64,000 bases of DNA, taken from contig CM074811.1 in NCBI GenBank assembly GCA_037447605.1, positions 2,604,001 through 2,668,000 of the forward strand, given 5' to 3'. Each line of letters opens with the position of its first letter. The first letter of the stretch is position 1. The notes beneath the pieces were generated by a model. It did not search any database. It was not told the origin of the DNA and saw only the letters and a program-made list of their open reading frames with translations. Of the stretch, positions 4,501 through 43,748 are shown piece by piece. The position numbers were made by a program, and so were the translations under genes. Source of the DNA: Zygnema circumcarinatum SAG 698-1b (lineage: Eukaryota; Plantae; Zygnematophyceae).

Positions 4501-7500
4501 TCAACGGTCCCCCCTCGCCTTACTCTCAGCAGGCAGAGCACTACCACCATCACTATGGCGAGGGCAACAATGACCCCCGAAGCGACCACCCCTGCAACAA
4601 GTCCTGGACTAGTAGTGAACAGTCCACCGCTGGGAGGAGGAGAGGGAGGGGGGCTCCCTCCTTCAGGTCCGGCGAAAGGAGGTGAGGGAGCTGATTGTGG
4701 AATGGGAGAAGAGAAGGGGTCGGGAGGGGGAGGGAACTGTTCACAGGTTGGGAGGCCGTACACTCCATAATATGTGCATAGACCTTGATTCGCAGATAAG
4801 CTGTTCAGAGAGACGAAGTTACAATTGGTAAGGGGACAGGGAAAGTCATCAAAATAGACCCACAAACGTGGGATGAGCTGGTTTGTGCACATTAACCGTA
4901 CAAGTTGACTAACATAACTCAGAAAGTTAGGCACGAAACCATGCTGGGGATTTTCACGAAATCTGCTAAAAGGAGGTGTTGCTCATCATTGAGTATCACG
5001 GTCAAACCTCCGTCAAAGCAAGGTTTGATCCTTTACTCACTTGACAGTTTTCGGGGTAAAGTTGGTTTCGTTAAGGGGAAATGCGCCGCTTAGCAAGTTA
5101 CTGGACAAATCTCTGCAGCTCCAAATCAAAGAGAGACTTTATGTGATGATTCAGTTGTGGCTACACCATCTCAGACGCTGACAGGAAGCTACATCAAACA
5201 AAAGGTGAAGGTGAAGTTAAGGTGAAGTTAAGGTGAAGTTAAGGTGAAGTTAAGTAGGACGAAAAGTATGAAGGAACGATTTAACTTCGAATGAAGTCTG
5301 TTTATATCGAGTGCATGTTAAAGTTCCACAGACTTACATGTCTTTAAGACGTAAGAGGTTTTGAAGTGATGAAGGCACCGACCCATTCAGTTCATTGCTC
5401 TGAAGATGCCTGAAAACCCCGACTTCCCCCGTAGGTTTAGCCAAAACAAACTCGTATCTTCATGAGTCAGCCAGGAAAATGGGATACAACAAAAAAATTA
5501 ACAAGTACTTTCTGGCATGTCCAGAATCCATATTTCCCTTCACCGAAAGCATTTGTCATTAGCATTCTGTATGCCTACAGATAACAATGGGAGAGGTTGC
5601 ATTCTGTATATCCGCAACAATCCTGAGCCTCCTCTCATGCAATGGCTTCATTTTCTTACAGTCTTCAGGACCCTACCGTGACCCCTCCAGATGGCCCTGA
5701 TTTTTTCTTTTTTTTCTTTAACATGCAGCAGGTTATCAGTCAGAAAGCTAAAATTTGACTCCGCATTGACTCATGCATCCTTTCAGGGACAAAACTAACT
5801 GAGGTGGAAACCAGTAAAAGGTGATGTAAAAAGGGTAAGGTCACACTCACAGAACTTCAAGAACTTCCAAATCTCCAAGGGAATCCGGAATTGGTCCTTC
5901 AAGTCCGTTGTAGCTTAGATCACTGCCCTCACAGGTAAAACCACAAACTGTGAACAGTGGATCCCATTTGGTACAAGTGATTCCATCAATTTCATCTGCC
6001 CAAGGTCTGAATAGTCTATTGGAGCATAAAAGTGATCTGCTCCATTTTCGGTTTTACTCTGACCCATCAACTGCTCATTGTGCGTTCACAGCAAAACCAT
6101 CAAACTTTCCATCATATCCTCCAGCTTCATTGAACCCGTATGCATTCTAGAGATGTCGTAACATTCCGAGAAGTCAACAGCAGAAGGAATCAGATTTTTG
6201 TTGGGTTGAGAGAAGTGAGAGATTGGCAGCTTACAGGATTTGCAGTGAGCTGATGTTGGCAAGAAACGGTGATATAGTCCCAGTCAATCCTGATGAGCTC
6301 ACATTTCTGCCGCCAACATACATAAACAAAGTAGTCACTAAGAGTGATCGAGAGCATCAATGGATGAAGGAGAAAACCTCCAGAATCCAAATGAGAACGA
6401 CTATCTGGACAGAAACTTTCTCAGCTTTCCCAGAAGAAGAAGAAGAAGAAGAAGAAGAAGAAGAAGAAGCTTACATGGCAGTCACTTTCGTGAGAAACGG
6501 AGTGCTACTTTGGCAAGTGACCCCAAACCATTCAATAGGCGAACATGGGTCCCCAACCCAATCGCTCAGAAGAGAGCCATCGGAAAGAGCATCTCGGAAA
6601 GCCTGCATGGCCAAAACTGCAAAAAGAGCGACCCCTCCACACAACCAAAGAAGGAAATAATGAGCAAATGCACATACCAAGAAATGCAGCTGTTGAAAAG
6701 TTAAATGCACACTCTAGCTAGATGAAGTGGACAGTGCTACTGCTTCAAGTTTTATTCCTCCAATTTGATCCCCCATACCTTCCAGTGGGTCGGTGGGAAT
6801 TGGCCCAGGTTGAACCTTCAGAAGCTCGAACCCATTAACCATTGGCATAAGAAGGGAGTCTGGAAGGGGTCTAAACTCCACATAGAGATCAGCTTGATCT
6901 CGATGAAGGATCGGATAAGTCATCATCACAGATCTGAAGGGGCCATCTGCGATGGAAACTATATCAATGTTGGGTTCCACACTCGCATTGTTGATGTAAA
7001 GGCCAAACATACGGTCATATGCCATGATATTCCGACCGGCTATTTCGGCAAAGTAGAAAAAAGCCTGTCAAGCCAACGAAAGACCACCATTAAGAATCAG
7101 ATTCTTGCTTCCTTACTGTACTTCTGCATCAAAGTGAGAGAAACATTATGGATGTGTACCTTTCCATTACTGTAAGGTTTCAAACGAGTCAACTCACTGC
7201 AACATTAGAATACCTGATAATCGCCATGTTCTAAGTCCAGAAAGATGTATCCTTTAATATCACTTGTGTTTGGAAACAACCGCGCAGACTGTAGCACAAA
7301 TTGTGGTACATAGTTAGGCGAAGTCATGGCTCCGGTGATGTTTTTGGTGGTATTGAGTGGAGGAGGGAGATCTGTCGGAGGGCTAACAAAGTAGTCTGTG
7401 CCGTAACGGATTGTCTGTTGGTCGTCGTTTATATCCGCAAACCATATCCTATCCAAAGGGTCTTCAGGATATCTGCAAGAAACAAAAACTTCTTAACAAA

Positions 7501-10500
7501 CCTTAATAAAAAACAGAAAAAGGGGGGATTAAAACCTCAAAAACAGTCAACTATTAACCTGATTTACACACCAAACGCACATGCAGATGCACCTCACGCA
7601 GTATGACCCCCCATTGCGATATTGACATTACTTACCTAAATTTTCCAACAGTGATATCCTCCCCACAAGCGAAGCGGAATTTGCCCACGAGAGCGGTGGT
7701 ATTGGTGTAGCCAAACGTGGTAGAAACGCCATAGGACTCACTTGGCAAAGGGCGAATCTCAATTCCATTTATTATGGGGTTTCGAAAGATTCGCAAGAGA
7801 CAGATCAGTATGTATGGAGTTTCAACGTCTAAGATGTATTCTGGTGAAAGGATGTTTCCCGTGTTCAAACGAATGGTCCCGCTGCCACCCTCATCAGCAC
7901 TCCCATCAGCACATCAGATACATACAGCAGCCACTTCTCTATGAAAGATTCCAATGCAATCTCCAGCCAAACTTGATTTCGCTCCCACACTAATGATATA
8001 AAAGCGTTTTAGCAGCCAATGATTGCTCAGCACGGCCTATGCATGAAAAGTAATCGACAATGCAGAACTATCTTTCGCTTGAACACGTTGCAATCGTCGA
8101 GTTTAAGTCTATGAATGGTCTACAAGAGCTCGCAGTTTGCCAATTACCATGCGGTTGTTCCAACAGATACATTAAAAATGGGGGCCGAACCCTGCCCGTC
8201 ATAATTATTGTAGTAAAACGTTAGCCGAACCAGATACCTTCCTGCACTTCCCAAACCGCTCAATTGCATGTCAAGATGACCTCTCTCATACAACACACCC
8301 GACAACATACACATCGCCAGCTCCACGGCGAAGAATCAATACCCAAGAATCACAAGAATCATACCCGGCTTTGTAACACTGATGTTGTAACAGTTTCTCC
8401 GTCCGTTTTCCTCTTTGAAGTATCGCAAGGTAAGTTGCATCTTTACAGCAGGGACTCCCAGAGGCAGATTATATATTAAAGTAGGATAGCCTCCTGAAAA
8501 GAACCGGTCTGTTGTCCAAGTAAGAGTGCCATTTTGATACGGTAACCCGGTGTAACCGCAGTCGATGTTAATGAAATCTGCATTTATATTCACCGTGCCC
8601 ATAGGTCAGATACTTGATGTTCCAGCAGATAAAAACGGAGAAAGGCAGAATGGCAGTTTCATCATAAAAAGATAGCAGACAGAACTTGTAAAGTGTTCAA
8701 TTAGTTTTACTTCAATTGTGGAGCTGCCCTCCCATTTCCATGACATTCACAATTGATTGTATGTCCAACTTGCTGTTTCGAGCATCAAAACGTAACATGA
8801 TAATCAAACCGTCGACCGTGCAGGAGGAACCCCTATGCAGAAATGGCAGGTGAGGCAAGAAAGTCTAGTCTCGCATGCATCAGCTGACAGAACGTATATG
8901 GTAGTCCATTCAGTAGCAACGATGAGTGGGGCATAACACTTAGCAGAAAGCATGGTGAAAAAAGGAGCACAGAAAAGAGCACAGAAAAGCTCTCACTTGC
9001 ATAAACGGACAGGATTCTGTTTTGCCAAGAAGCCAATCCATGTCAGCATGCAGCAGTGAAGGGTGTTTCCAGAGACCTGAAGGAAAACTGCACGCATTCT
9101 TCCAAACAATGGAAACTTATTCTAGAACCGAGGACTGTGGAAATGACTGAACAGGTTGAGCTGCCGTTGATCATGCGACGTCAATCCATGGTTTTACATG
9201 CTGGCTAATTGGCATTCTCGCTTTTACACATACCAACTTTCTTAAAAAACGTCAAAATGAGCAAGCTAACCAATGAGCAGCATTCCCTCTTTCGCAAAAG
9301 ATGCAATGCAGCCTGGTGTGGATGCTGCTAAATGTGCACATTCTCGCATGTTGCACAATTGAAAATTATAGCTTCTATAGTCTGATCAACGTATCCAGGG
9401 GTTGCTGCTCGTGCTTTCCCCTGAAGATCGTCCAGGATAGCCTTTCTCCCACATCATTTATCATTCAACAACAAGGCCAGCTGCTTTCACTGTCTTGCGC
9501 TACCCCAGCTCACGCAAAAAAGACTGACTTGCAGTAAAACCATTTTCTCCTCCCAAGACAGACCCATGCACTGTGCTGCCTGCAGCCCCCCCTGCATGCT
9601 GCCTCTCTGTAACCCACTATGGCCAGTATAATCCCCAGTTCCAGTTCCTAACTGTGCCCTTTTCCATTCCTATGGACAGCGTGGATGACATGGTCCCAAT
9701 TCCCGACTGCGCCTGTTCTGCTTGCGATTACCAACAATCAGTGGTCTGTGTACCCTAAAAGCAGCAAGCACGGTGTAGGCCTCCGGGATATCGTGGGCCT
9801 TCTAAGCTCACGATAAAAACATAAACGACATACGCTTCAGCAAAATATATCATATCCGACTATTCTACACTTCTTAACTTTCACACCTACGCAGCATGAA
9901 TATTACCATGCAGCCTGAGCATTCCCTCTCCATGCCGTCTACCTCCGACTATGTACAGCACTTATGCCCTCCGACAGGTTACATGACGAACATTATAACA
10001 CTTTGCGGCTTCTCCTGAGACCTCTTTAGCCAAAGGGCTTAAGGAATTTGTTGGAAGCATTCTCCCACTGTCTGCATAGGTGCCTGCAGTTCTTGTACTC
10101 TAAGTTCCATTCCTGTTACCTTCACACTATGTCCCTTATCCCATCAATCAAGGCCGCAAAAGAAAAAAGACCGCCTCCATTTTGCCTTCCACTTTCAACG
10201 TACTTCAAAGGCTTTGCCGGAAAATGAAACTTCATTCTACGGAACTTCCTGGTCGCTTTAACTCAGTCAAATTCACGACTACAACTTGCCTTTCACAGAG
10301 CTGCAAGCTTTCTGCCTATGAAACGAATTTACAATCATTCCCTATGCTACATGAAGTCTACTCGAGTTCAGCCCTTGCCTGGCTAGTGTCCATTAGCCAT
10401 AAAGACGAGAAAAGAAACAAGTCTCCCATTTTATAGTTGTTTTAGGACGTCATAGATGAATAAACCATGCCTGGTTCGGACGTGCCCACTGGATTTCCGT

Positions 10501-29034: not shown

Positions 29035-29690
29035 TGAGATTGCGTGTGCTTTCGAAGTTTCGAGTTCGTGTAAGTGGCACCACCAAGACTAATATCCCGC
29101 ATAGGTCTGCAGACAGCAGACTGAATGAGCCCCAAGGGTTTTGCGAAAAAGGTAGAGCTAGAGGGGAAAGGTAAGCGGGTCATTTTGCCTTGACCACATC
29201 CGGAACAGAAGTCCATTTTTTCACTAGAAAAGGAGTCTAAGCCCAATACTAATCCCTTGCCTAGAGCCTTGAGATTACTCTTAGCAAGATGGCCAAAATA
29301 AAGGTGCCGCCGAGCAAAGGTAAGAGACTAGTCAGCTTTATGAAGGTGAGCATGCCCAAGAGCGGCAGCAAACGTGGTGAGAGAAAACAGTCACCTTTCT
29401 TGCGTCCGTGCCCACCAACGGCCGTTGGAGTAAAAAAGATAACTCCCTTTCGGATAAAAAGAGCTGAAATGCCTAAAGTGAGGATAGCGCCTACAGACAA
29501 CAAATTTTTAGTCATCCCGGAGACTAAACAAACAACATCGATGACGGAGCGCTGGCCGTCAACCAAAGTGGATACCTTGCCAACATGGGTCGCAGTCAAA
29601 GAACGATTATCCCTTAAAAAGATCGTCAAAGGGACAGATAAAGGAGAAATCCGAGAGAACCATTTACGGCAAAAAGCTGAGTGGTGAGAG
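29035..29690 (-). mobile_element. Degenerate Ty1/copia pol fragment (protease end, GAG-pre-integrase, start of integrase)
   Basis: SHH..FCRKWFSRI...GKVS...VCLVSGMTKNLLSVG, then frameshifted HLGHL...LVLGLDSFSSEKMDFCSGCGQGKMTRLPFP...LIQSAVCRPM...SLGGATY, the typical copia pre-integrase/rve order. Truncated at both ends. Confidence 0.85.
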
Positions 29691-30371
29691 GTGTTGATGT
29701 ACACCAAGGGGGTACATCAAGGTGTTGGTACTTAGTTCCTAGCATGAATTCGGTCATGTTTGGTAAAGGACCGAACATGGGGGTGCCCATATCATTAGGG
29801 CACGGTACGACAGGTCTAGGGATGGTCTAGGGTCGTAGGATTGCGGCATTGACTTAGACCGTACCAAAGGGGGTGCGCGGAGTGCGCCTGGACGGATTGG
29901 AGCGCGGCCATACGGAACGGCGCGCGAATTGTACGGACGACGCGAAAGTTTACGGATGCGGAGATTTTGGAAGCGCGAGAGGCGGATTTGCGTGAAGCGA
30001 CAGGATTGGTCGCGACAGTACGCAAATCGCGGCGCATCTCTATGCGTGACGTGACGTTCAACTGTCCGTACGCTTCTGCATCGTCCGTACAATCACGCGC
30101 CATTCGTACGGCCGCGCTCCCGTTCAGGCGCATTCCGCGCACCCCCTTTGGTACGGTCTAAGCCTGAGCCGTAACCTACGACCCTCGACCTTCACTAGAC
30201 CTGCCGTACCGTGCCCTAACGATGCGGGCGCCCCCCATGTTCGGTCCTACACCAAACATGACCATCCATGCATGGACATTGTCCCTATATCAACACATTG
30301 ATGTCCCGGACAACACTCATGCGAGGAACTAAGTAAGTACCAACACTTTGATGTACCCTATACATCAACAC
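29691..30371. mobile_element. Foldback-type non-autonomous element with ~260-300-bp imperfect terminal inverted arms
   Basis: The left arm GTGTTGATGTA...GGTCATGTTTGG...GGACCGAACATGGGG...TTAGGGCACGGTACG...CTTAGACCGTACCAAAGGGGGTGCGCGG is mirrored at ~30065-30371. The right arm has a ~45-bp extra segment. No TSD seen. Confidence 0.8.
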
Positions 30372-30373
30372 GC

Positions 30374-30684
30374 ACGAGTGCCGGAACGAGTGCTCTTTTG
30401 GAGTGGAATCGCTAAGATGATGGTTTACCGGGGACTTGGCGGCGACCACGTGGGATCCCCTTGAAGACTAGCGCTGATGGTTGTTGTTGTCGTGAGGGGA
30501 TCATGGAACTCGCAATCGTAAAAGATAAAAGCCTGCCATCCGACGAGACATTTTCCTTGTCCGATTCATTGAACACGTAATCGCAGTACTACTGCGGACG
30601 AAACGTCGGCCGGCCCGTTTAAAGAACGAGTACATTGATTTGTTCCCGATCCTATTCAAAAAGAGTACTCGTTCCGGCACTCGT
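30374..30684. mobile_element. Small MITE-like element with ~27-bp inverted termini
   Basis: ACGAGTGCCGGAACGAGTGCTCTTTTG (30374-30400) versus the reverse complement of 30657-30684, with 1 mismatch and 1 indel. No TSD. Confidence 0.55.
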
Positions 30685-31106
30685 TCGCCCGCACCGGTGC
30701 GCCGTTCTCCGTCCGCCGTTGACCTCACCCTGTACGGACAGGCACGCGCGCTCGAACGGTGCGATTCGAATCTGGCGACGCCGGCGAGGCGCTCCGCCAA
30801 TCACGGCCTCTGCGACGTGATCGCGGGTGACTTGGCGACTGCCCTCCGCCTGTCGCACAAGCCGATGGCTTGTCGGTGGCTCCTGATTGGTGTGCATCAC
30901 ACTGATTGTCAAACAACGAATAGGATCGCGCCACGTAGAACATTATCCTTCTGGCGGCCACCCTCCGAGGCCGTACGGTGGGCGGCAGTCCGGCAGGTAC
31001 TTAGCGGAACTGCGCTCGGCGGCGTAGCAACGATCCGGATCGCTCTCCGACCTCCCCACCGAGCTCGCCGCCTCCCTCCCTCCCTCCCTCGCGCGCAGCC
31101 ATAGCC

Positions 31107-32625
31107 ATGGCGGTTCCCCCCCTCGCGCGTCTCTGCACTCCCCTCCTCTGCGTCCTCCTGATGTCGCTGACTCCCTTCACGTGTGCGGCTCCCCTTGCTC
31201 CTGAAGAAGGTAAGATTACCCCTTACATTCTACTGTCGCTTAATCAATGATCTCTTTGCTATATATTGGCGCTAGCACTGCTTCAAGGAGATGATGATGG
31301 ATTCGAATGGAAGCATAAATTTCTGCCACTACTTTCTGATCCTCACTCCAGCTGTCGTGTCTTATTGCATGCAGAGAAATTCCTCTTGCAGCTGAAGGCC
31401 TGGGTGGAGGGGACGGCCTGCGATCAGTTGGACGGCGTTACATGTGACAGCGCGGGCCACATCAGTGCCCTGTACGCATTTCTTCTCCGTGTTGGCTGAC
31501 TGTACTGTGCTCAGTGTCTGACCTGCTGCCTTTCCCCTTCTCATGGGTCTCCACACCCTCGCGAACACTCCCAAACCCTCATTTTAATATATAAGTCTGC
31601 CATTTTGATGCAGTTCTCTCCCCAAACATGCCGAGCCGGAGTCGGATTCGTCCACGAGCGCAGCGGAGCTGCCTGGCGTGGCACGGAGAGAGTTGGCGAG
31701 CACTCCCCCGGCAACAGTGGGCCTCAAGGCTCCTTCGACGAACAAGCATTTGCCTTTGCCCAAAAATGTGACCTTTTCCGGCTACATGACTCTTCCCACG
31801 GTCGGTGGATCCGGCCGTCGGTTCATCCGCTACGGCTCCAAGGAGGCCAAGGCCTTAACTCCGAAGTTGTTCAAGAACTGCAACCTGGGTCTACCCGCCG
31901 CATCTGTCATTCCAGGGTTCGAGGACAGCGGCATGAGCTCGGGCGTAGTGAAGCTCGTGATCTTAGACAGCAAAGGCGAATGGTACTCAGAGTGCTCGGG
32001 ATCGCTGATCGCTCCCAGGCTCGTGCTGACAGCTGGCCACTGCCTGTATGACACCGACAAGAATGTGTGGATGGTGGGCGGCTCCTACAACCTGGCAGCG
32101 TACTCAAGATATAACACCCAATCTGACAAAAACTACTCCATGTCCTACTACTCGGAGGTCAGGGTGTTTTCTGCGTTTCAGACGTCCCCTACGTGGGAGA
32201 AGACTCTGTACGCCGGCAGCGACATTGCTTTAGTGAAGCTGCAGACCAGCCTTGCAGGGCAGACGTACTCATGGAGCGGCCCTTCCGCCAACCCACGTGC
32301 CAATTTCGGCTATCCTGCTGAATTTCAGGATGGCTATAAGCTCGATTACGACGTGACCACAGCTGCGCTGACTCGCGGCTGCCAAGGCTTCTCCTCGGCA
32401 ATCATGTGCGAGGACGTCTCTATAGAAGGGGGCATGAGTGGAGGGCCGATATTTAGTCCCTACAACGGTGTGAACGTGGCGGGGACTCTTTCCGGGGGAC
32501 AGTCGGACGACAGTTGCCCTGCTTATTACACTTCTTTGAACGGCACGTACTCTTTGACGACTCTGGTCACCGCCATTGGCTGCAAATATACAGTAAGTGG
32601 AGGTGTGTACAAGGCTTCGTGCTAA
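31107..32625 (+). CDS. Secreted chimeric protein: signal peptide + LRR N-terminal cap + V8/trypsin-like (S1) serine protease, ~403 aa, 3 exons
   Basis: Exon 1 31107-31209 (MAVPPLARLCTPLLCVLLMSLTPFTCAAP). Exon 2 31375-31471 (EKFLLQLKAWVEGTACDQLDGVTCDSAGHISAL). Exon 3 31614-32625 is in frame with the 315-aa ORF. Triad motifs CSGSLIAPRLVLTAGHC (His), SDIALVKL (Asp), GGMSGGP (Ser), plus GYPA. Both introns are GT-AG and phase-compatible. Confidence 0.85.
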
Positions 32626-33736
32626 GCGTTGGCAGGTGGAGGGGGAGCACCTGCGAGAGTTGAAACCTTCGCTTCAAACGCCGCAGGAAGAGCAAGCGGA
32701 TTATGGCTGCTGCCGCTTCTACGGGATAGGGGTAACTTATACTGGCCGTTGTTTGACTAAAGGGTGGTTAGTCGTTTTCCGGGCCGCCAAGATGTGAGAA
32801 TAGTCTCCATCACAAATGTTTCGTACTTAATAAGCAAGGAGCTTTTTGGGAGCAATGGTGATTTTTTTTGTGATTCGCTTGTAGTGAGGGCAGGCGGGGG
32901 AACAATATGTTTTCAATGAATGGACTTGTCGGACAAGCTTTGCACTTGTTCTGTTTTACATGTACTGTTTACAGCAAAAGCTGATCTCGTTTGTGCCATA
33001 TCATACTCTGCCATCTTTGCCCTATCTAGTGACGTGTTCACCAATGTGCCGCTTGCTCCAAGCGCTCCGTCGGCCAAACTGCGTATAACGCGCTCAATTG
33101 TTGAGTTGCGGTTGAGTTGCTCTAGTTGGCGACTGCCACATGAGTGAGTAATCGCTGTCGCGCTGCATTAGAGCGTCATGAGTGTTTGCACCACCTTGGC
33201 AGGTTCTCCACTTCTTAGTGCAATTCACCTTCTTCACTTCGCTCATCGAATCACACGGAACCCGCCAGCATGCAAATAAACATAAAATTACAAGGCATTT
33301 CATCGTATGGAAAAGAATTACGAAAATCATTTTCGTATGCGCATAATTGCGTTGACACAGGACACAATCAAATGTCATGGAAAATGTACAAAAGGCATTG
33401 GCCATAATGCCTTACTATCCCCGTTGCCACGAAGAGGATTAACATGTTCCCATTCTTCACCCTTTTTATTACCCATCGTTGAGAAACTTCAAGATTGTGG
33501 CGCCTGCGTGAGCGGCCGCCATCGAAAGGGATGAATGCGTTTTGCAGCCGATGAATAATGGACCTTGCACATCTCAGTAACTTCTCTTATGAAGAAGTGA
33601 AGAGAGAACGAGATGGCGAAGGTGGCCGAAATCGTGATAAGGGGGGAAGAGAGAAGAGAGTGAGACGGAAGAGCGGAGATTGAGATGTAGCAGAGAGATG
33701 AGAGCGAGAGAAAGAGAGAGAGAGAGAGAGGGAGAG

Positions 33737-33770
<34 letters not shown>

Positions 33771-35259
33771 AGAGCAATGAATCGAAAACCGATGGATAGA
33801 GAAAGTGGCCGGAGAAGAGGTACTTGTTACTTTAATTTAATGTACCTTTAATTTTCGTGATTTCTATAATGAACTCTGCCTCCCAAACAAACCCTTGCCG
33901 TTTGCATGTTAGAATCAACAGCATTGAAATTTATTCACAGAGTCAGCACCAATCTACTTAGCGTTCATGTCCTAGAATTACAACTGTCAATCTCCAACCG
34001 TGAGTCCAACACCAACCTGCTTAACGTTCAATTTTTCGGGTTAGCAGCCTTGACAGGATATCTGTTAGCAGGGAGTGAGCAGCCACCTGCTGCAGCCTCT
34101 CCCAGCGGTGCTCCCAGGCCTCGCTCACGAGCTTCAGGCTGCCCACCGCGTGTGCTTCCCTCCCTCCCCTTCCTCTTGACAAGGCTCGTTCTCGCCTTCC
34201 TTTTAGGGCCGTTGCGAACTAGGCGAGGCTAATGTCACATCCGTCTACGAATGACGACGTGCCACGTGTACCATATTGTATACGTGGCGAGTTGTGATTG
34301 GAGGTATTCGAATCATTCTCTATTAAGAGAAAGGAATGATTTTTTTCGTTTTTTCGCCTCTCCAGTGGCATTCAGTGCCAAGCCTTGCAGTCAAACTCTG
34401 CAGGCGCGACTTTCGACGAATGAGGAGTCGGAGTTTTAGGGTTTTCAAGATATTTAGAGTACTTAGGGTGAGCATATTTAGTCATTAGTTTATGGCAGGA
34501 GGCTTGAGGGGAGGTGCTGATGAGGCGGCCCTTCCCTAGAGAAAGGCCCTCTGTGTGTCTCCGCTTCTCTCCCTCTCTCTCCCACTTGTCTCCTTCTCTC
34601 CTTTCTTTTCCCTGTTTTCTCCTCTCCACTCAGTCTCTCTCGATTCCTCGCTCCCTTCCCATCTCTGTTCCCCCTTCGCGCTCCCAGCTGCCAGCTGTCT
34701 CATTCTCTCCCTCCCCGTCTCCCTCAACCCATTCCCCATTCTGCCTCTCGCTGATCCCTCACTCTCTCTCAGTCGCCTTCAACCCCTTTCTCTTCTCTCC
34801 CTCCACCCTCCCCCACCTCCCCCCTCTCTTTCTCTGGCTCTCCCTCTTTTCTCCCTCTCTTTCTCTCTCCCCATATGGACACTACGAGCGCCCCCGCTCA
34901 GGGATTAGGGTTCCGGGCCCCACCGGAGGGCTCATGGCGAGAGACGTGGTCGCGGCGGCAGGGGGAACTGCAGACCCTTCAGCGTCCATTCGCAGTAATT
35001 CCTGTTGTATACAATAGGGGTTTAGCCTAGAATAGGACACCGTACGGTTCTTAGCCATTGTCGCAGGTCTTTAGGAGATTCGGTCACTGCCGGAACAGAC
35101 AGACATTCCGTCGCAAAGTGAGGACGCGAGACTTCTGAATAGGGCACGTGGAGAGCGGCGATAGGCCGCGCCATCACTGGAATCTGCTTAGAATGAATGT
35201 TGTAGTTGTGTCACGTGGCGCACAGCGATAGGCTGCGCGGTCAGCTTTGTATTGCTTAT

Positions 35260-36145: not shown

Positions 36146-39100
36146 CAGTAGGACCCCGTCATATTTTCCACCTTCAAAAGTGCGTCCCCAAGAAATTCGC
36201 CCCGATTTTGCCGAAACCACCTTTTTGTACGGTAACTAGTGTTAGCCGTACTACTCGTACTGTCCGTACTTTTCGTACTGTCCGTACTATCTGTACTAGC
36301 CGTTACGGGCTTACGCAAAACTCACCTAATCTCCCCGCTCGTGCCGCCGTAAGAGGCGCTCGCTTTTCTCCCCTTCTTCCTGGCTTCGATACGATACGAT
36401 ACGAAACAATCGGTACGACACTATACGATACGATACGAAACGCCCCGATAGGTATTGTCCGTACGAGCCGTACGAGCTGAGACGAACAACAGAAAGCGGA
36501 AAAGGGTAACTCTACTGCACCCCCGCGTTTTGTCTTTCGCACCCCCCTTTTGAAAATTTTGCCTGCCCGTTTTGGTACCCACCAGTTTTGAATATTTCGG
36601 GAAGGCCTGCCTCTGCTTCTCCTGTCCTCCCTGTGCCTTCTTCTCCTTCCTCCCTGTTCTGTCTCGGCCTCCCTCTCAAGCTCAGTTTCTCCTCTTTCCT
36701 TCTTTCCTTCCTTCCTCCTCTCCCTTCCTCTCCCTCCTCCTCCTTCCTACTCCTCCCTCCCTCCCCTCCTCTCCCTCCCTCCCTCCCTCCCTCCCTCCCC
36801 TCCCCTCCCTCCCTTCCCTCCCTCCCTCCCTCCCTCCCCTCCCTACCCTCCCTCCCTCCCTCCCTCCTTTTCTGGACATTCCACCCCCCTCGTTTTCTCC
36901 TTTTCACTATTGACTTCCAACAATGTGCGACAAAAGAAAAGGGGATTTGCATTGGTCTCAAGATGGTGAGGCCATCAAATAAACATGGACAAAGTCAACA
37001 TGGGAACCACAAGAAATTGCAAACCGAGAAGAGGAGAGACGAGGAGGGGAGGGCAAGGGAGGGCAGGGCAGGGGAGGGGGGGAGCGGAAGGGAGCGGGCG
37101 GGAGGGGAGGGCCGAGGAGGACAGGGAGGGGACGGGAGGGGAGCGGGCGGGAGGGAAGGGCTGGGGAGGAAAGGGTAGAGGAGGGGAGCTGAGCGGAGCG
37201 GAGGGGAGGGAGGGAGGGAGGGGAGGGGAGGGAGGGAGGGAGGGAGGGAGGGAGGGAGGGAGGGAGGGAGGGAGGGAGGGAGGGGAGGGGAGGGAGGGGA
37301 GGGGAGGGAGGAGGGAGGGGAGGGAAGGGGAGGGAGGAGGAGGGAGGGAGGGAGGGAGGGAGGGAGGGGAGGAGGAGGGAGGGAGGGAGGGAGGGGAGGG
37401 GAGGGAGGGAGGGAGGGAGCGGAGGGGACGGGACTGGCGGGAAAAAGATTTGTTCCCGAAATATTCAAAACTGGGGGGGTAACCAAAACGGGCAGGAAAA
37501 GTTTTCAAAAGGGGGGTGCGAAAGACAAAACGCGGGGGTGCAGTAGAGTTACCCGCGGAAAATTACGTCTATGCGTCACGATATGTCACGATACGATACG
37601 ATACTAAACGAGACAGTACGATACGGTACGATACCATACGGTACGATACGTACGGTCCAACATTTCCTCTAACATAATACCGCCCGTCTATTCGTAACAC
37701 GAACCTTATATATGAAAAATTAATATTTTCGCCTCATATTGGCCGGAACCAGGGTGGAAAATATGAGGACCCCCTACTGTACCCGTACAAGCTGTACTAG
37801 CCGTCACGGGCTTACGCAAAACTCACCTATTCTCCCCGCACGCGCCGCCGTAAGAGGCGCTCGCTCTTCTCCACTTCTTTTTGGATTCGATACGATACGA
37901 TACGGCCCGATACGGTACTATCCGTACTAGCCGTACGAGCTGTAGTACAGTAGGACCCCATCATATTTTCCACCTCAACATTTGCGTCACCAATAAATTC
38001 GCACCAATTTTGCCGAAACCACTTTTTTGTACGGTAACTTCGTGTTAGCCGTACAATCCGTAAAATTCGTACAATTCATTCTATCCGTACTAGCCGTACT
38101 AGCTGTAGTAGCCGTCACGGGCTTACGCAAAACTCACCAAATCTCCCCGCTCGTGCCGCCGTAAGAGGCGCTCACTCCTCTCCCCTTGTTATTGGCTTCG
38201 ATACGATACGACACGATACGAAACGCCCCGATACGGTACTATCCGTATTAGCCGTACGAGCTGTAGTACAGTGGGGGGTCCTCATATTTTCGCCATGGTA
38301 TTGGCCAAAAAGGGGCGAAAATATTGATTTTGCAAATATAAGGTTCGTGTTACCAATAGGCTTTCGGTAACATGTTAGAGTTCATGTTTGTCCGTACGTA
38401 TCGTATCGTGTAATATCGTATCGTATCGAACCATATCGTCCAATATCTATCGTACCGTTCCGTATCGTATCGTCCAATATCATACCGTATCGTACTATAT
38501 CGTACCATATCGTACCGTATCTATCGTACCGTGTCGTATCGTATCGCATACACGTAGTTTTCCGCTCTTCGCGTTGTTTTTCTCATTGATGATGCTATAA
38601 TTATCAATAGTGGAAGAGCACACCCATGATGAAATAAATGAGTGAGTTAATATTAGGCTGGGGGTTGACGGGCTTCCACGGCAATGAAACAAAACGGGTG
38701 CCTTGTGCGACTTGGACGACGCTCAATACCAAAACACCTCTTCAAGTCAATATGCTTGCCGTTTAGATGGTTGATGTGGATGGTATATGGAGCAGACGAG
38801 GAGAGGAGCGAGCGCCTCTTACGGCGGACACCTGTGGGAAGATTCTACAACTCGTACGGCTAGTACGAATACAGTGGGGGGTCCTCATATTTTCGCCATG
38901 GTATTGGCCAAAAAGGGGCGAAAATATTGATTTTGCAAATATAAGGTTCGTGTTACCAATAGGCGGGCGGTATTATGTTAGAGTTCATGTTTGTCCGTAT
39001 ATATCGTATCGTCTAATACCGTATCGTATCGTTACGTATCGTGTAGTATCGTATCGTATTGTGCCGTATCGAAGCCAAGATGAAGGGGAGAGGAGCGAGC

Positions 39101-41291: not shown

Positions 41292-43748
41292 TCATTGCAC
41301 TTCACTTAAGAAGACCTGTCGAATGAACCGTGCAGCAACCCTCGAAGTCAGCCTCGTTGCCACTTCTGGCACGACCTGCACCGCCACATTGGGCACCAAA
41401 GGGAGCAGCTCCCTCCCCAGCTCTAACGGGCCCCACTCTACTGCTCTCCCCCCTAGTGCATGATTGGAGCCTTCCTGCCCTCTTATCAAAAAGTCGGTGA
41501 CTCTCCGCAGGTTATATAGAACTGCTCGGTCTTCCTCGTTCACAGAGGGCACCAGGAAGTGTTCTGCAGCTGTATTCCCTGTTCTCCGGAGCAAAGTGGT
41601 GATCCCCAAAGCCTCTAGCCTGTCCCTAGTCTGTTCCCGCGCTAAGGCATCCATGCCCTTCACAATCTCGTCCAGAATGAACTCTCGGAAAAACGCCCCT
41701 TCATCAGAGAACAAGAATGCTAGGGCTGCTCGCGCCTGACCTCCCTCACTACTTGGGGCGAACTGGGCCATAGCTGGAACAGTCATTGTTGGGAATGCAG
41801 ATGTGCTTGACGAGGGAAGGGCTCTCACACGGGAGGTAGGTCTCTCAGGTTCACCTTGTCCGGCAGTTGCAGCAGCTGCAAAGGTCTCAAAGGCCTCCAT
41901 AACATCGATAAACCGGTCAGCATCAAAGATGCCTTCTTTTCCGTAAATAGTGTACTTCAAGGCCTGCCTTAACCTGGGGGAAGGATCTGTCAAGAGCCTC
42001 TGTGCTATGTATGGGTATGCAGCATCCACAATTGCGAAATCAGAATTCCCCACCAACGCGATTCCTTCAAGCACACCAATTGCCCGAATGATGAGAGCAA
42101 AGTAAGGCGGAATGCGGAACGGATAATCGAAAGTGATTTGCGCCAAGTCAGCGGCCAACTCCTGGAAATTGATCCCCTTCGCGCCACCACCTTCCAACGC
42201 TTGGTCAAACACCCGTGCAAGGACCGGCATGATGGGAGTGAGGTCAACACCTTCAGGAATGAAATCAAGAAGTACAAAGTCCTCGACAATCGCAGGATAA
42301 TCGCGATGTATAAGGTGTGAAATTGCCTCTATCATGCCGTACTTTTGGTCCTCCGTGATGCGAGTCATCAAGCCAAAGTCGAGCACTGCAAGGCGACCAT
42401 CCGGTGTTCGGATGAGATTACCGGGATGGGGGTCCGCATGGAAGAGACCCGTGTCGAGCAGCTGCTTGAGGTAGCAAATGACTCCCACATTCACTAGAGA
42501 ACCGACATCAGAAGCAGTACTTTGCGAGAGTTTCTCGCCATCTATCCATCCGGAGACAAGCACCCTTCGGGATGTGTATTCGGGGAATGTTTTTGGGACC
42601 ACCACCTGAGGAAGGTCTTTCGCCATTGAAGCCGCAAAAGCAGCAGTGTTGGAAGCTTCGTTTACATAGTCAAGTTCTTCAAAGAAACGAGCTGCCCACT
42701 CGTCAACAAGCCCAACGATATCTGTTGCGATCTGTGGGACCCCGCGAAGAGCCAAACCCAGCCGTCGGATAATGAACAAATCGACGGTCACAGTTTCAAG
42801 CACATATGGTCTCTGCACCTTCACTGCTACAGACTCCCCAGTTGACCGCAACCGGCCTTTGTACACCTGTCCTAATGAAGCAGCAGCGATAGGATCGGGG
42901 GATAGCTCTGAGAAGATTTCAGATGGGGAAACACCAAGCTCTTCTTCCATCAGCTTCATGGCAATACCATTGTCAAAACTTGGCACCTTGTCACACAGTT
43001 TCTGAAGCTCAGTCATTGCGGCAGGGGAGAGAATATCCGGCCGGATACTGAGGGCCTGGCCGAGTTTAATGTAAGCTGGCCCAAGAGACGTGACAATCTC
43101 TCTCAGCTGAATGGCCCGCATCACCTCATTCTCCCTCACTTGCTTTCGAATGAGGTCAGAAGCTACTCCTGTCAGAAAGCCCCCTGCCACCCCTAAGAGC
43201 TGCAAAATTCTCTGTGCAACAGCTGCAGGTCGCTTCGACCAATACGCGGCAATAGTCTCCGGCTTGTATACCAGAGGCAGTTCCTCTCCCTCCCCTCCCG
43301 TCTCTACCTGCACTAACCTCATCTGTACATCATCTGCTGCAAATTGAGAGTCATTTAAATTCTGGCCCCTCAGTCCCCTCATCAGCGATGCCACTTGTAC
43401 ATCCTCCTCCATCTGTGCCCGCATCCGCTTTATCTCAGCTGACATTTCCCCCACTCGCATTCGTCGGCCACCCTTGCTCTCCTCCCCTACATCTAACTTG
43501 ACCCTATCGCTTTCCCCGTATTGCACTCGAGGCCTCTCTGTCACAGCACACCTCCATCGCAAAGCCCTTCCTGCGTGGTTTCCTGCCGATTTGCTAAAAG
43601 CTTTTCCTAGTAGTGGTTTCGTTCCAACTGCTTTTGTGAGCGGCACGCCACCCAGCAGTATCCTGCAGTCTACACGGAAGGAAGCCATGCACTGCGCTTC
43701 CATAACGTCTGCATAACCAAAAGACACTTTCATTTTGTTGTCAGTCAT
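41292..43748 (-). CDS. ABC1K6: ABC1 atypical kinase, plastid ABC1K6 (At3g24190)-like, 818 aa, intronless CDS
   Basis: Single ORF with LREIVTSLGPAYIKLGQALSIRPDIL, AAASLGQVYKG, VAVKVQRP, FFEELDY..E, FHADPHPGN, LDFGL. The subfamily call comes from recalled similarity of the RAQMEED..LMRGLRGQNL N-terminal motif. Confidence 0.9.
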   Translation of the reverse strand: MTDNKMKVSFGYADVMEAQCMASFRVDCRILLGGVPLTKAVGTKPLLGKAFSKSAGNHAGRALRWRCAVTERPRVQYGESDRVKLDVGEESKGGRRMRVGEMSAEIKRMRAQMEEDVQVASLMRGLRGQNLNDSQFAADDVQMRLVQVETGGEGEELPLVYKPETIAAYWSKRPAAVAQRILQLLGVAGGFLTGVASDLIRKQVRENEVMRAIQLREIVTSLGPAYIKLGQALSIRPDILSPAAMTELQKLCDKVPSFDNGIAMKLMEEELGVSPSEIFSELSPDPIAAASLGQVYKGRLRSTGESVAVKVQRPYVLETVTVDLFIIRRLGLALRGVPQIATDIVGLVDEWAARFFEELDYVNEASNTAAFAASMAKDLPQVVVPKTFPEYTSRRVLVSGWIDGEKLSQSTASDVGSLVNVGVICYLKQLLDTGLFHADPHPGNLIRTPDGRLAVLDFGLMTRITEDQKYGMIEAISHLIHRDYPAIVEDFVLLDFIPEGVDLTPIMPVLARVFDQALEGGGAKGINFQELAADLAQITFDYPFRIPPYFALIIRAIGVLEGIALVGNSDFAIVDAAYPYIAQRLLTDPSPRLRQALKYTIYGKEGIFDADRFIDVMEAFETFAAAATAGQGEPERPTSRVRALPSSSTSAFPTMTVPAMAQFAPSSEGGQARAALAFLFSDEGAFFREFILDEIVKGMDALAREQTRDRLEALGITTLLRRTGNTAAEHFLVPSVNEEDRAVLYNLRRVTDFLIRGQEGSNHALGGRAVEWGPLELGRELLPLVPNVAVQVVPEVATRLTSRVAARFIRQVFLSEVQ

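What the first reader, a model, noticed from the sequence alone, without database searches (positions are those of the whole stretch)
31614..32625. Protease module looks bacterial: candidate horizontal transfer
Seen: a 1-kb uninterrupted exon in an intron-dense genome, with codons visibly richer in C/G endings than the ABC1K CDS (by eye, not computed). Motif spacing is CSGSLI...LVLTAGHCLYD...DIALVKL...GYPA...DG..L...C...GGMSGGP. Established: this pattern fits bacterial V8-like/glutamyl-endopeptidase-type S1 proteases (COG3591) rather than plant Deg/HtrA or NAL1-type enzymes. Inference: acquired from bacteria and domesticated by fusion to host exons.
Basis: partly seen in the sequence, partly recalled or inferred. 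Interest (0 to 1): 0.7.

Follow-up and report, generated by a model that had tools for sequence, protein, structure and literature searches.

The report
Algal secreted protease of bacterial type
This exon is a real, built-in gene piece of a green alga that encodes a probably active secreted serine protease of a bacterial-looking type. Its nearest relatives are a handful of proteins from other algae and giant-virus-like DNA, not bacteria, so a bacterial donor is plausible only as a distant, unproven origin.

Summary
Bases 31614-32625 (+) form one open exon ending in TAA. Its GC3 is 0.685 against 0.524 for the ABC1K gene.

The two upstream "host" exons are just as GC3-rich (0.74; no difference from the protease exon, p=0.46). 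ABC1K is itself a 2.45-kb uninterrupted ORF. So neither composition nor exon length marks the module as foreign.

A full search of 1.84 billion representative proteins found only 9 relatives at E<=1e-10:
- a transcript with the same signal, cap and protease layout (41%);
- Tribonema gayanum, a yellow-green alga (37%);
- proteins on giant-virus-like contigs (33-36%).

Contamination is unlikely. Earlier notes of this scan report sister genes elsewhere in this genome.

The parts
31107..31209 (+). Exon 1: ATG plus a signal-peptide-like N-terminus (34 codons plus 1 base), followed by a GT donor at 31210.
   Evidence: Read from the sequence and checked by script. A hydrophobic core is followed by a small-residue cleavage-type site, and the ending 'PLAPEE' parallels 'PIVPEEE' of P0003. 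The signal peptide was judged by eye; no predictor was run.
31375..31471 (+). Exon 2: a Cys-containing cap that resembles the N-terminal cap of plant LRR receptors (K-A-W ... C ... G-V-T-C-D ... G-H-I-S-A-L).
   Evidence: AG acceptor at 31373-31374 and GT donor at 31472. It lines up with the 'ESWAAGADCTQWAGLSCDAAGHVLSL' stretch of the P0003 transcript. Pfam LRRNT_2 gave no hit on this 31-aa piece or on P0003:30-85, so the LRR-cap label rests on the motif alone.
31614..31869 (+). First part of exon 3: Ser/Pro-rich linker followed by a probable pro-region.
   Evidence: Homology to P0003 and to the Tribonema protein P0004 starts at exon-3 residues 42-43, ahead of the catalytic domain. One Cys (residue 89) is nearly invariant across the family. 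The pro-region function is inferred.
31870..32625 (+). Remainder of exon 3: S1 (trypsin-fold) catalytic domain, a short Cys-containing tail and the TAA stop.
32038..32040 (+). Catalytic His codon (in T-A-G-H-C); exon-3 residue 142.
   Evidence: Invariant in all 10 family members and in all 70 sequences of the wider alignment.
32221..32223 (+). Catalytic Asp codon (in S-D-I-A-L); exon-3 residue 203.
   Evidence: Invariant column.
32437..32439 (+). Catalytic Ser codon (in G-G-M-S-G-G-P); exon-3 residue 275. Met stands where chymotrypsin-type enzymes have Asp194.
   Evidence: Invariant column. The motif was read from the sequence.

Best explanation
The exon encodes the linker or pro-region and the catalytic domain of a probably active, secreted S1 serine endopeptidase. 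It is a genuine nuclear gene of a streptophyte alga: three exons, with GT-AG introns at 31210-31374 and 31472-31613. Exons 1 and 2 supply a signal peptide and a small Cys cap.

The protease belongs to a very small, rare family known so far from one transcript with the same layout (P0003), a xanthophyte alga (Tribonema), a few contigs of unknown origin and giant-virus-like contigs. This family sits inside the mostly bacterial radiation of YdgD / V8-like (COG3591-type) S1 peptidases and has no land-plant members.

The most likely history is an old, non-vertical acquisition of a bacterial-type protease by algae and/or their giant viruses, later joined to N-terminal secretion and cap exons in the streptophyte lineage and multiplied there. 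It is not a recent capture from a bacterium.

Shown: the gene structure, the intact triad, the fold class, the rarity of the family and the list of relatives. Inferred: secretion, activation by removal of the N-terminal part, and the direction and age of the transfer.
For: - Gene and motifs.
- The triad is invariant across the family and across the 70-sequence alignment.
- Relatives: the exhaustive HMMER search of 1.84e9 representatives gives 9 proteins at E<=1e-10. The best are P0003 (41%), P0004 (37%), P0005 (36%) and P0002 (35%). P0004 is from Tribonema gayanum. P0002 lies among genes for DNA polymerase B, RNA polymerase Rpb1 and a D5 primase-helicase. P0001 lies on a 56.6-kb contig densely packed with ORFs.
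- Layout: the P0003 transcript contig carries signal, PEEE, cap and protease in the same order.
- Careful ML tree: family support 92/93; family plus P0060/P0093 95/86; query plus P0003 99/94; the animal clade is separate at 97/89. The next neighbours are from Bacteriovorax, Elusimicrobiota and proteins JGI labels 'V8-like Glu-specific endopeptidase'.
- Bacterial genomes: best 24-31% identity.
- Integration: DNA contigs from separate studies tile the locus with zero differences, including 30501-31524 across the upstream flank, exon 1, intron 1, exon 2 and the first 53 bases of intron 2. Their depth is similar to that of the flanks.
- Transcription: contigs from runs that look like RNA carry 31914-32575 exactly.
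Against: - No read or contig shows the exon 2 to exon 3 splice for this exact copy. The model rests on splice signals, reading frame and agreement with P0003.
- The deep placement is weak. Nodes joining the family to named bacteria have support 72/81 and 43/14, and family plus animal S1A as one clade is not rejected (p=0.066).
- Profile search against PDB sequences ranks animal elastase (5.5e-14) above the Bacillus glutamyl endopeptidase (1.5e-7).
- The organisms behind P0003, P0005-P0008, P0014, P0060 and P0093 are unknown.
- This genome's own proteins appear absent from the protein collections (no self or paralogue hit). Other streptophyte-alga genomes may be missing too, so the rarity among streptophyte algae may be partly a sampling effect.
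- Activity and secretion are untested.
Confidence: 0.6

Rival explanations
1. One reading: the protease module was taken directly from a bacterium by this alga's lineage and then fused to host exons.
For: The fold and the profile neighbours are bacterial-type. The module has no introns while the N-terminal part has two. There are no land-plant relatives. A published precedent exists: Chlamydomonas Cre06.g267750, a 'V8 proteinase' with a Kazal domain added, whose closest homologues are bacterial (PMC8643629).
Against: The best matches among representatives of 185,579 bacterial and archaeal species are only 24-31% identical, below the algal and virus-like relatives at 33-41%. No named bacterial protein lies inside the family clade. 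GC3 of the module equals that of the 'host' exons (p=0.46). The query and P0003 are already only 41% identical yet share the fused layout, so the fusion is old.
Confidence: 0.12
2. An old eukaryotic S1 family, inherited vertically and lost in most lineages including land plants; giant viruses picked it up from their algal hosts.
For: The family's identified members are eukaryotic or virus-like. The streptophyte pair branches as sister to all other members rather than inside the virus-like ones. A clade with animal S1A is not rejected. PDB sequence profiles favour elastase and chymotrypsin C.
Against: The distribution is extremely patchy: 9 clusters among 1.84e9 representatives. The tree and the structural neighbours place the family among bacterial proteins. 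The Asp194 equivalent needed for chymotrypsin-type zymogen activation is missing; the family has Met, Ala or Asn there.
Confidence: 0.22
3. Contamination or misassembly: the exon is bacterial or viral DNA wrongly joined to algal sequence.
For: No single short-read contig spans 31525-31913.
Against: The break coincides with a near-identical paralogue that splits the assembly graph, as shown by variant contigs at 31642-31926. All 30 bins have depth in run X1 and 29 of 30 in X5, the exon has about the same depth as its flanks, and runs from 8 studies hold at least part of the stretch. The exon begins at a proper acceptor in a frame continuous with exons 1 and 2, and the P0003 transcript has the same joined layout.
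Confidence: 0.02

Closest known systems
Glutamyl endopeptidase of Bacillus intermedius (PDB 1p3c) and staphylococcal V8/Esp proteases (MEROPS S1B; COG3591 'V8-like Glu-specific endopeptidase')
   Different: Only 17-18% identical. The margin over animal elastase is about 2 Z units. The gene here carries a eukaryotic signal and cap, a roughly 85-residue N-terminal extension and a Cys-containing tail. Substrate preference is unknown.
Chlamydomonas Cre06.g267750 'V8 proteinase' (Kazal domain plus trypsin-like domain), reported as bacterial-type with HGT suggested (PMC8643629)
   Same: A green-algal S1 protease of bacterial type with an extra N-terminal module that bacterial homologues lack.
   Different: The added module is different (Kazal inhibitor versus signal plus LRR-type cap).
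Animal chymotrypsin/elastase family (MEROPS S1A, Pfam PF00089)
   Same: Pfam Trypsin is the top family. Elastase 1bru is the top PDB sequence-profile hit at 5.5e-14. The Cys...Gly-His-Cys 'histidine loop' cysteine pair is present.
   Different: There is no Asp194 equivalent (Met instead) and no Ile-Val-Gly-Gly-type activation site (read from the sequence). The animal proteins form a separate clade at 97/89.
Family members on giant-virus-like contigs (P0001, P0002)
   Same: 33-36% identical over 80% of the ORF, including the pro-region and the C-terminal tail. They fall in the same clade.
   Different: They have an N-terminal membrane anchor instead of a signal plus cap, no introns, and GC3 of 0.40-0.42. 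No close relative exists among isolated viruses in BFVD, where identity is 19% or less.

Membership tests
Peptidase family S1 (trypsin fold) | Double beta-barrel fold with significant family-model matches | tested here: met
Peptidase family S1 (trypsin fold) | Catalytic His, Asp and Ser in that order | tested here: met
   H142, D203 and S275 (exon-3 numbering) are invariant in alignments A2 and A4.
S1B / COG3591 V8-like glutamyl endopeptidases | Closer in structure and sequence to V8, Esp and Bacillus glutamyl endopeptidase than to S1A | tested here: inconclusive
S1B / COG3591 V8-like glutamyl endopeptidases | Cleavage after Glu/Asp | not testable with these tools
   Needs an enzyme assay. The pocket residues cannot be assigned reliably at 17-18% identity.
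S1A chymotrypsin family | Asp194 and a new N-terminus (Ile16) for zymogen activation | tested here: not met
   The motif is G-G-M-S-G-G-P; family members have Met, Ala or Asn at that position. No Ile-Val-Gly-Gly-type site was seen in the sequence.
Plant Deg/HtrA (S1C) | Protease domain followed by PDZ domain(s) | tested here: not met
   No PDZ or other Pfam domain in the ORF. The protein ends 20 residues or so after the protease fold.
Horizontally acquired gene of bacterial origin | Recipient sequences nested inside a donor (bacterial) clade with strong support | tested here: inconclusive
   The family lies among bacterial sequences, but the connecting nodes have support 72/81 and 43/14. No bacterial sequence exceeds 31% identity.
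Horizontally acquired gene of bacterial origin | Composition unlike host genes | tested here: not met
   GC3 is 0.685 for the module against 0.74 for exons 1 and 2 of the same gene (p=0.46). The whole gene is GC3-rich relative to ABC1K.
Horizontally acquired gene of bacterial origin | Patchy distribution, absent from the recipient's relatives | tested here: met
   9 representatives at E<=1e-10 among 1.84e9. None of the relatives that could be identified is from a land plant; the named ones are one xanthophyte and virus-like contigs. Caveat: proteomes of streptophyte algae may be poorly represented.
LRR receptor N-terminal cap (Pfam LRRNT_2) | Match to the LRRNT_2 model | tested here: not met
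   No Pfam hit even at E<=10 for exon 2 (31 aa) or for P0003:30-85. The resemblance is by motif only.

The most novel reading that the evidence does not exclude
The family is a giant-virus-borne secreted protease that has moved between giant viruses and unrelated algae (a streptophyte and a xanthophyte). On this reading the alga's multiplied cap-protease genes descend from a viral gene that was captured and then given host secretion and cap exons.
Probability: 0.25. Interest if true: 0.65.

Novelty: new variant of a known kind. Interest (0 to 1): 0.42.

Why it matters
Land plants are not known to have free trypsin-type (non-Deg) S1 proteases (background knowledge, not tested here). A close algal relative of land plants that carries, multiplies and transcribes such genes points to an extracellular proteolytic toolkit that was lost or never passed on. 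The family is shared with giant-virus-like genomes and a yellow-green alga, which makes it a usable marker for gene traffic between algae and their viruses. The joining of receptor-type N-terminal exons to a foreign-looking enzyme is a clear case of exon shuffling. As an HGT claim, however, it is not yet resolved, and similar bacterial-type algal S1 proteases have already been described.

Tried and rejected
- Word-based protein searches gave little. The query alone found 2 hits. The 10-sequence profile was swamped by bacterial YdgD-type candidates. The query plus P0003 profile returned only P0003.
- The IMG/VR scan with family patterns found no relative.
- The JGI metagenome scan found only distant relatives, 35% identity or less over matches of more than 70 residues.
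- BFVD has no close viral structure.
- The first structure model, built from 10 sequences, was poor (pLDDT 52) and was not used.
- The genome scan with the 10-sequence alignment failed for lack of a conserved stretch.
- The SRA and ENA accession numbers of the relatives were not found in any paper, so their organisms stay unknown.
- Pfam on neighbours of P0001, P0006 and P0007 did not settle whether those contigs are viral.
- Pfam LRRNT_2 was not detected on exon 2.
- No second copy of the protease lies in this window (tblastn).
- The possible donor GTAAGT at 32593 was rejected because homology continues to the stop codon.
- Read data gave no splice joint for this copy.

Full report
WHAT IS THERE

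Bases 31614-32625 (+) are open in one frame from 31615 to a TAA at 32623-32625, directly after an AG acceptor. Pfam matches are Trypsin (1.5e-14, 54.8 bits) and Trypsin_2 (3.9e-7); NCBIfam gives nothing. The catalytic residues are His142 (32038-32040), Asp203 (32221-32223) and Ser275 (32437-32439), counted in exon-3 residues. All three are invariant in the family alignment and in a 70-sequence alignment with distant relatives.

GENE MODEL

- An ATG at 31107 opens a 34-codon signal-peptide-like exon that ends at a GT donor (31210).
- A second exon, 31375-31471, encodes a short Cys-containing cap.
- Its donor (31472) and the acceptor before 31614 keep the frame into the protease exon.
- A transcript-like contig from another public run (L003, protein P0003) has the same order of parts: signal, P-E-E-E, cap, linker, protease. 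It is 41% identical to the query.

The joined layout is therefore real and old. Pfam does not recognise the cap as LRRNT_2, so that label rests on the motif only.

THE TWO 'FOREIGNNESS' ARGUMENTS

GC3 of the protease exon is 0.685. That is well above ABC1K (0.524; p=6e-7), a PPR fragment (0.544) and a malectin fragment (0.516). But exons 1 and 2 together have GC3 0.74, which is not different from exon 3 (p=0.46) and is also above ABC1K (p=0.001). The whole gene is GC3-rich, so composition does not mark the protease module as foreign. The ABC1K gene in the same window is a single 818-aa ORF, so a 1-kb exon is not exceptional here.

RELATIVES

An exhaustive HMMER search of 1.84 billion representative proteins found 190 hits at E<=0.001 but only 9 at E<=1e-10.

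| Protein | Identity | Source | Notes |
|---|---|---|---|
| P0003 | 41% | transcript-like contig, organism unknown | same layout as the query |
| P0004 | 37% | Tribonema gayanum transcriptome | xanthophyte alga |
| P0005 | 36% | unknown | resembles P0004 |
| P0002 | 35% | 42.6-kb contig | flanked by DNA polymerase B, RNA polymerase Rpb1 and a D5 primase-helicase, i.e. giant-virus-like |
| P0001 | 36% | 56.6-kb contig densely packed with ORFs | sister of P0002 |
| P0006-P0008, P0014 | 35-40% (local) | short contigs | origin unknown |

After these come multi-domain animal S1A proteins, whose scores are raised by repeated domains, and bacterial proteins named trypsin-like peptidase, YdgD or 'V8-like Glu-specific endopeptidase'. 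Scanning one genome for each of 185,579 bacterial and archaeal species gave 361 relatives. The best matches of substantial length were only 24-31% identical, mostly from Rhodobacterales and Streptosporangiaceae. IMG/VR, JGI metagenomes and BFVD added nothing close. No identified relative is from a land plant.

TREE

The careful ML tree used 53 domains and 269 columns.

- The ten family members form one group (bootstrap/SH-aLRT support 92/93).
- Two more proteins of unknown origin, P0060 and P0093, join them (95/86). They have signal-like N-termini and sit on mRNA-sized contigs.
- The query pairs with P0003 (99/94) and branches as sister to the xanthophyte plus virus-like members, not inside them. 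The direction of any exchange with viruses therefore cannot be read from the tree.
- The next neighbours are a Bacteriovorax protein (72/81), then an Elusimicrobiota protein and a JGI-labelled 'V8-like' protein (43/14).
- Animal S1A domains form a separate clade (97/89).
- Forcing family plus animals into one clade costs 18.9 log-likelihood units, p-AU 0.066. This is suggestive but not a rejection.

STRUCTURE

ESM Atlas structural neighbours are all bacterial clusters, with TM up to 0.80. By sequence features the nearest Atlas cluster mixes bacterial and chlorophyte members. Against PDB sequences, however, the family profile ranks elastase first at 5.5e-14 and the Bacillus enzyme at 1.5e-7. 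The motif G-G-M-S-G-G-P lacks the Asp that chymotrypsin-type zymogens need. 'Bacterial V8-like type' is therefore a fair but not secure description.

IS IT REALLY IN THIS GENOME?

- Public runs from 8 studies labelled with the same organism hold at least part of the stretch.
- DNA contigs tile it with zero differences. One 1,024-base contig runs from the upstream flank through exons 1 and 2 (30501-31524).
- Exon depth is similar to flank depth.
- The only untiled part, 31525-31913, coincides with variant contigs from a paralogue about 95% identical, which splits short-read graphs.
- Two runs behave like RNA: they have no depth in the introns and one shows a spliced joint in the neighbouring minus-strand gene. 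Both carry 31914-32575 exactly at low contig depth, and the paralogue at much higher contig depth.
- No splice joint for this copy was seen.

Contamination is very unlikely.

HOW IT PROBABLY WORKS (inferred)

The protein enters the secretory pathway by its signal peptide. The cap and the 85-residue linker or pro-region probably keep or place the enzyme until they are removed. The mature domain then cuts proteins outside the cell, in the wall, the mucilage or the medium. Nutrition, wall remodelling and defence against microbes are all possible roles, and none was tested.

COMPARISON WITH WHAT IS KNOWN

A review of Chlamydomonas proteases describes an S1 'V8 proteinase' with an added Kazal domain. 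Its closest homologues are bacterial, and the authors suggest HGT (PMC8643629). The present gene is the same kind of thing with a different added module, in a streptophyte alga, and with the new feature that its closest kin include giant-virus-like genomes.

Earlier notes of this scan report sister genes elsewhere in this genome and reach similar conclusions. My results were obtained independently and agree with them.

VERDICT

This is a real, integrated, probably active secreted protease gene of a rare family shared by algae and giant-virus-like DNA, of bacterial type. The HGT idea is plausible as an old event, but the bacterial donor, the timing and the route are unproven, and both compositional arguments fail.

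Noticed in passing
window 29667-30334: A high-copy repeat just upstream of the gene. Summed contig word depth is 5,000-8,600 against 30-90 in the flanks, and DNA runs show an inverted joint at 29749/30289. It is probably a transposable element with inverted ends.
   Followed up: no
window 41295-43748 (-): The ABC1K gene is one uninterrupted 818-aa ORF (Pfam ABC1 9.1e-63), so intron-free genes of 2.4 kb exist in this 'intron-dense' genome.
   Followed up: partly
window 31642-31926 and 32617-32823: Runs that look like RNA carry variant contigs (13 and 9 differences) at contig depths of 2277 and 1243, against about 7-8 for the exact copy. This suggests a paralogue about 95% identical elsewhere in the genome that may be much more strongly transcribed.
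   Followed up: partly
window 33300-34500 (-): A neighbouring gene on the minus strand. Run X7 shows a joint that skips 33876-34086 with CT..AC ends, i.e. a GT-AG intron on the minus strand.
   Followed up: no
window 36500-37500: A GC-rich low-complexity block. GC reaches 0.69 and GC skew flips from -0.59 to +0.79 within 1 kb, with overlapping ORFs on both strands.
   Followed up: no
L002:1-17266: A metagenome contig that carries family member P0002 between genes for DNA polymerase B, RNA polymerase Rpb1 (domain 5) and a D5-type primase-helicase. It is a giant-virus-like genome fragment with many ORFs that match no Pfam family.
   Followed up: partly
L004:2-2239: The ORF next to family member P0006 has a Peptidase_C70 (AvrRpt2-like papain) domain at 3.4e-18, so two different proteases sit side by side on a contig of unknown origin.
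   Followed up: no
L003:122-376: In the related transcript P0003, the first 85 codons (signal plus cap) have GC3 0.69 and the rest 0.51. The N-terminal part, not the protease, is the GC3-rich part there.
   Followed up: no
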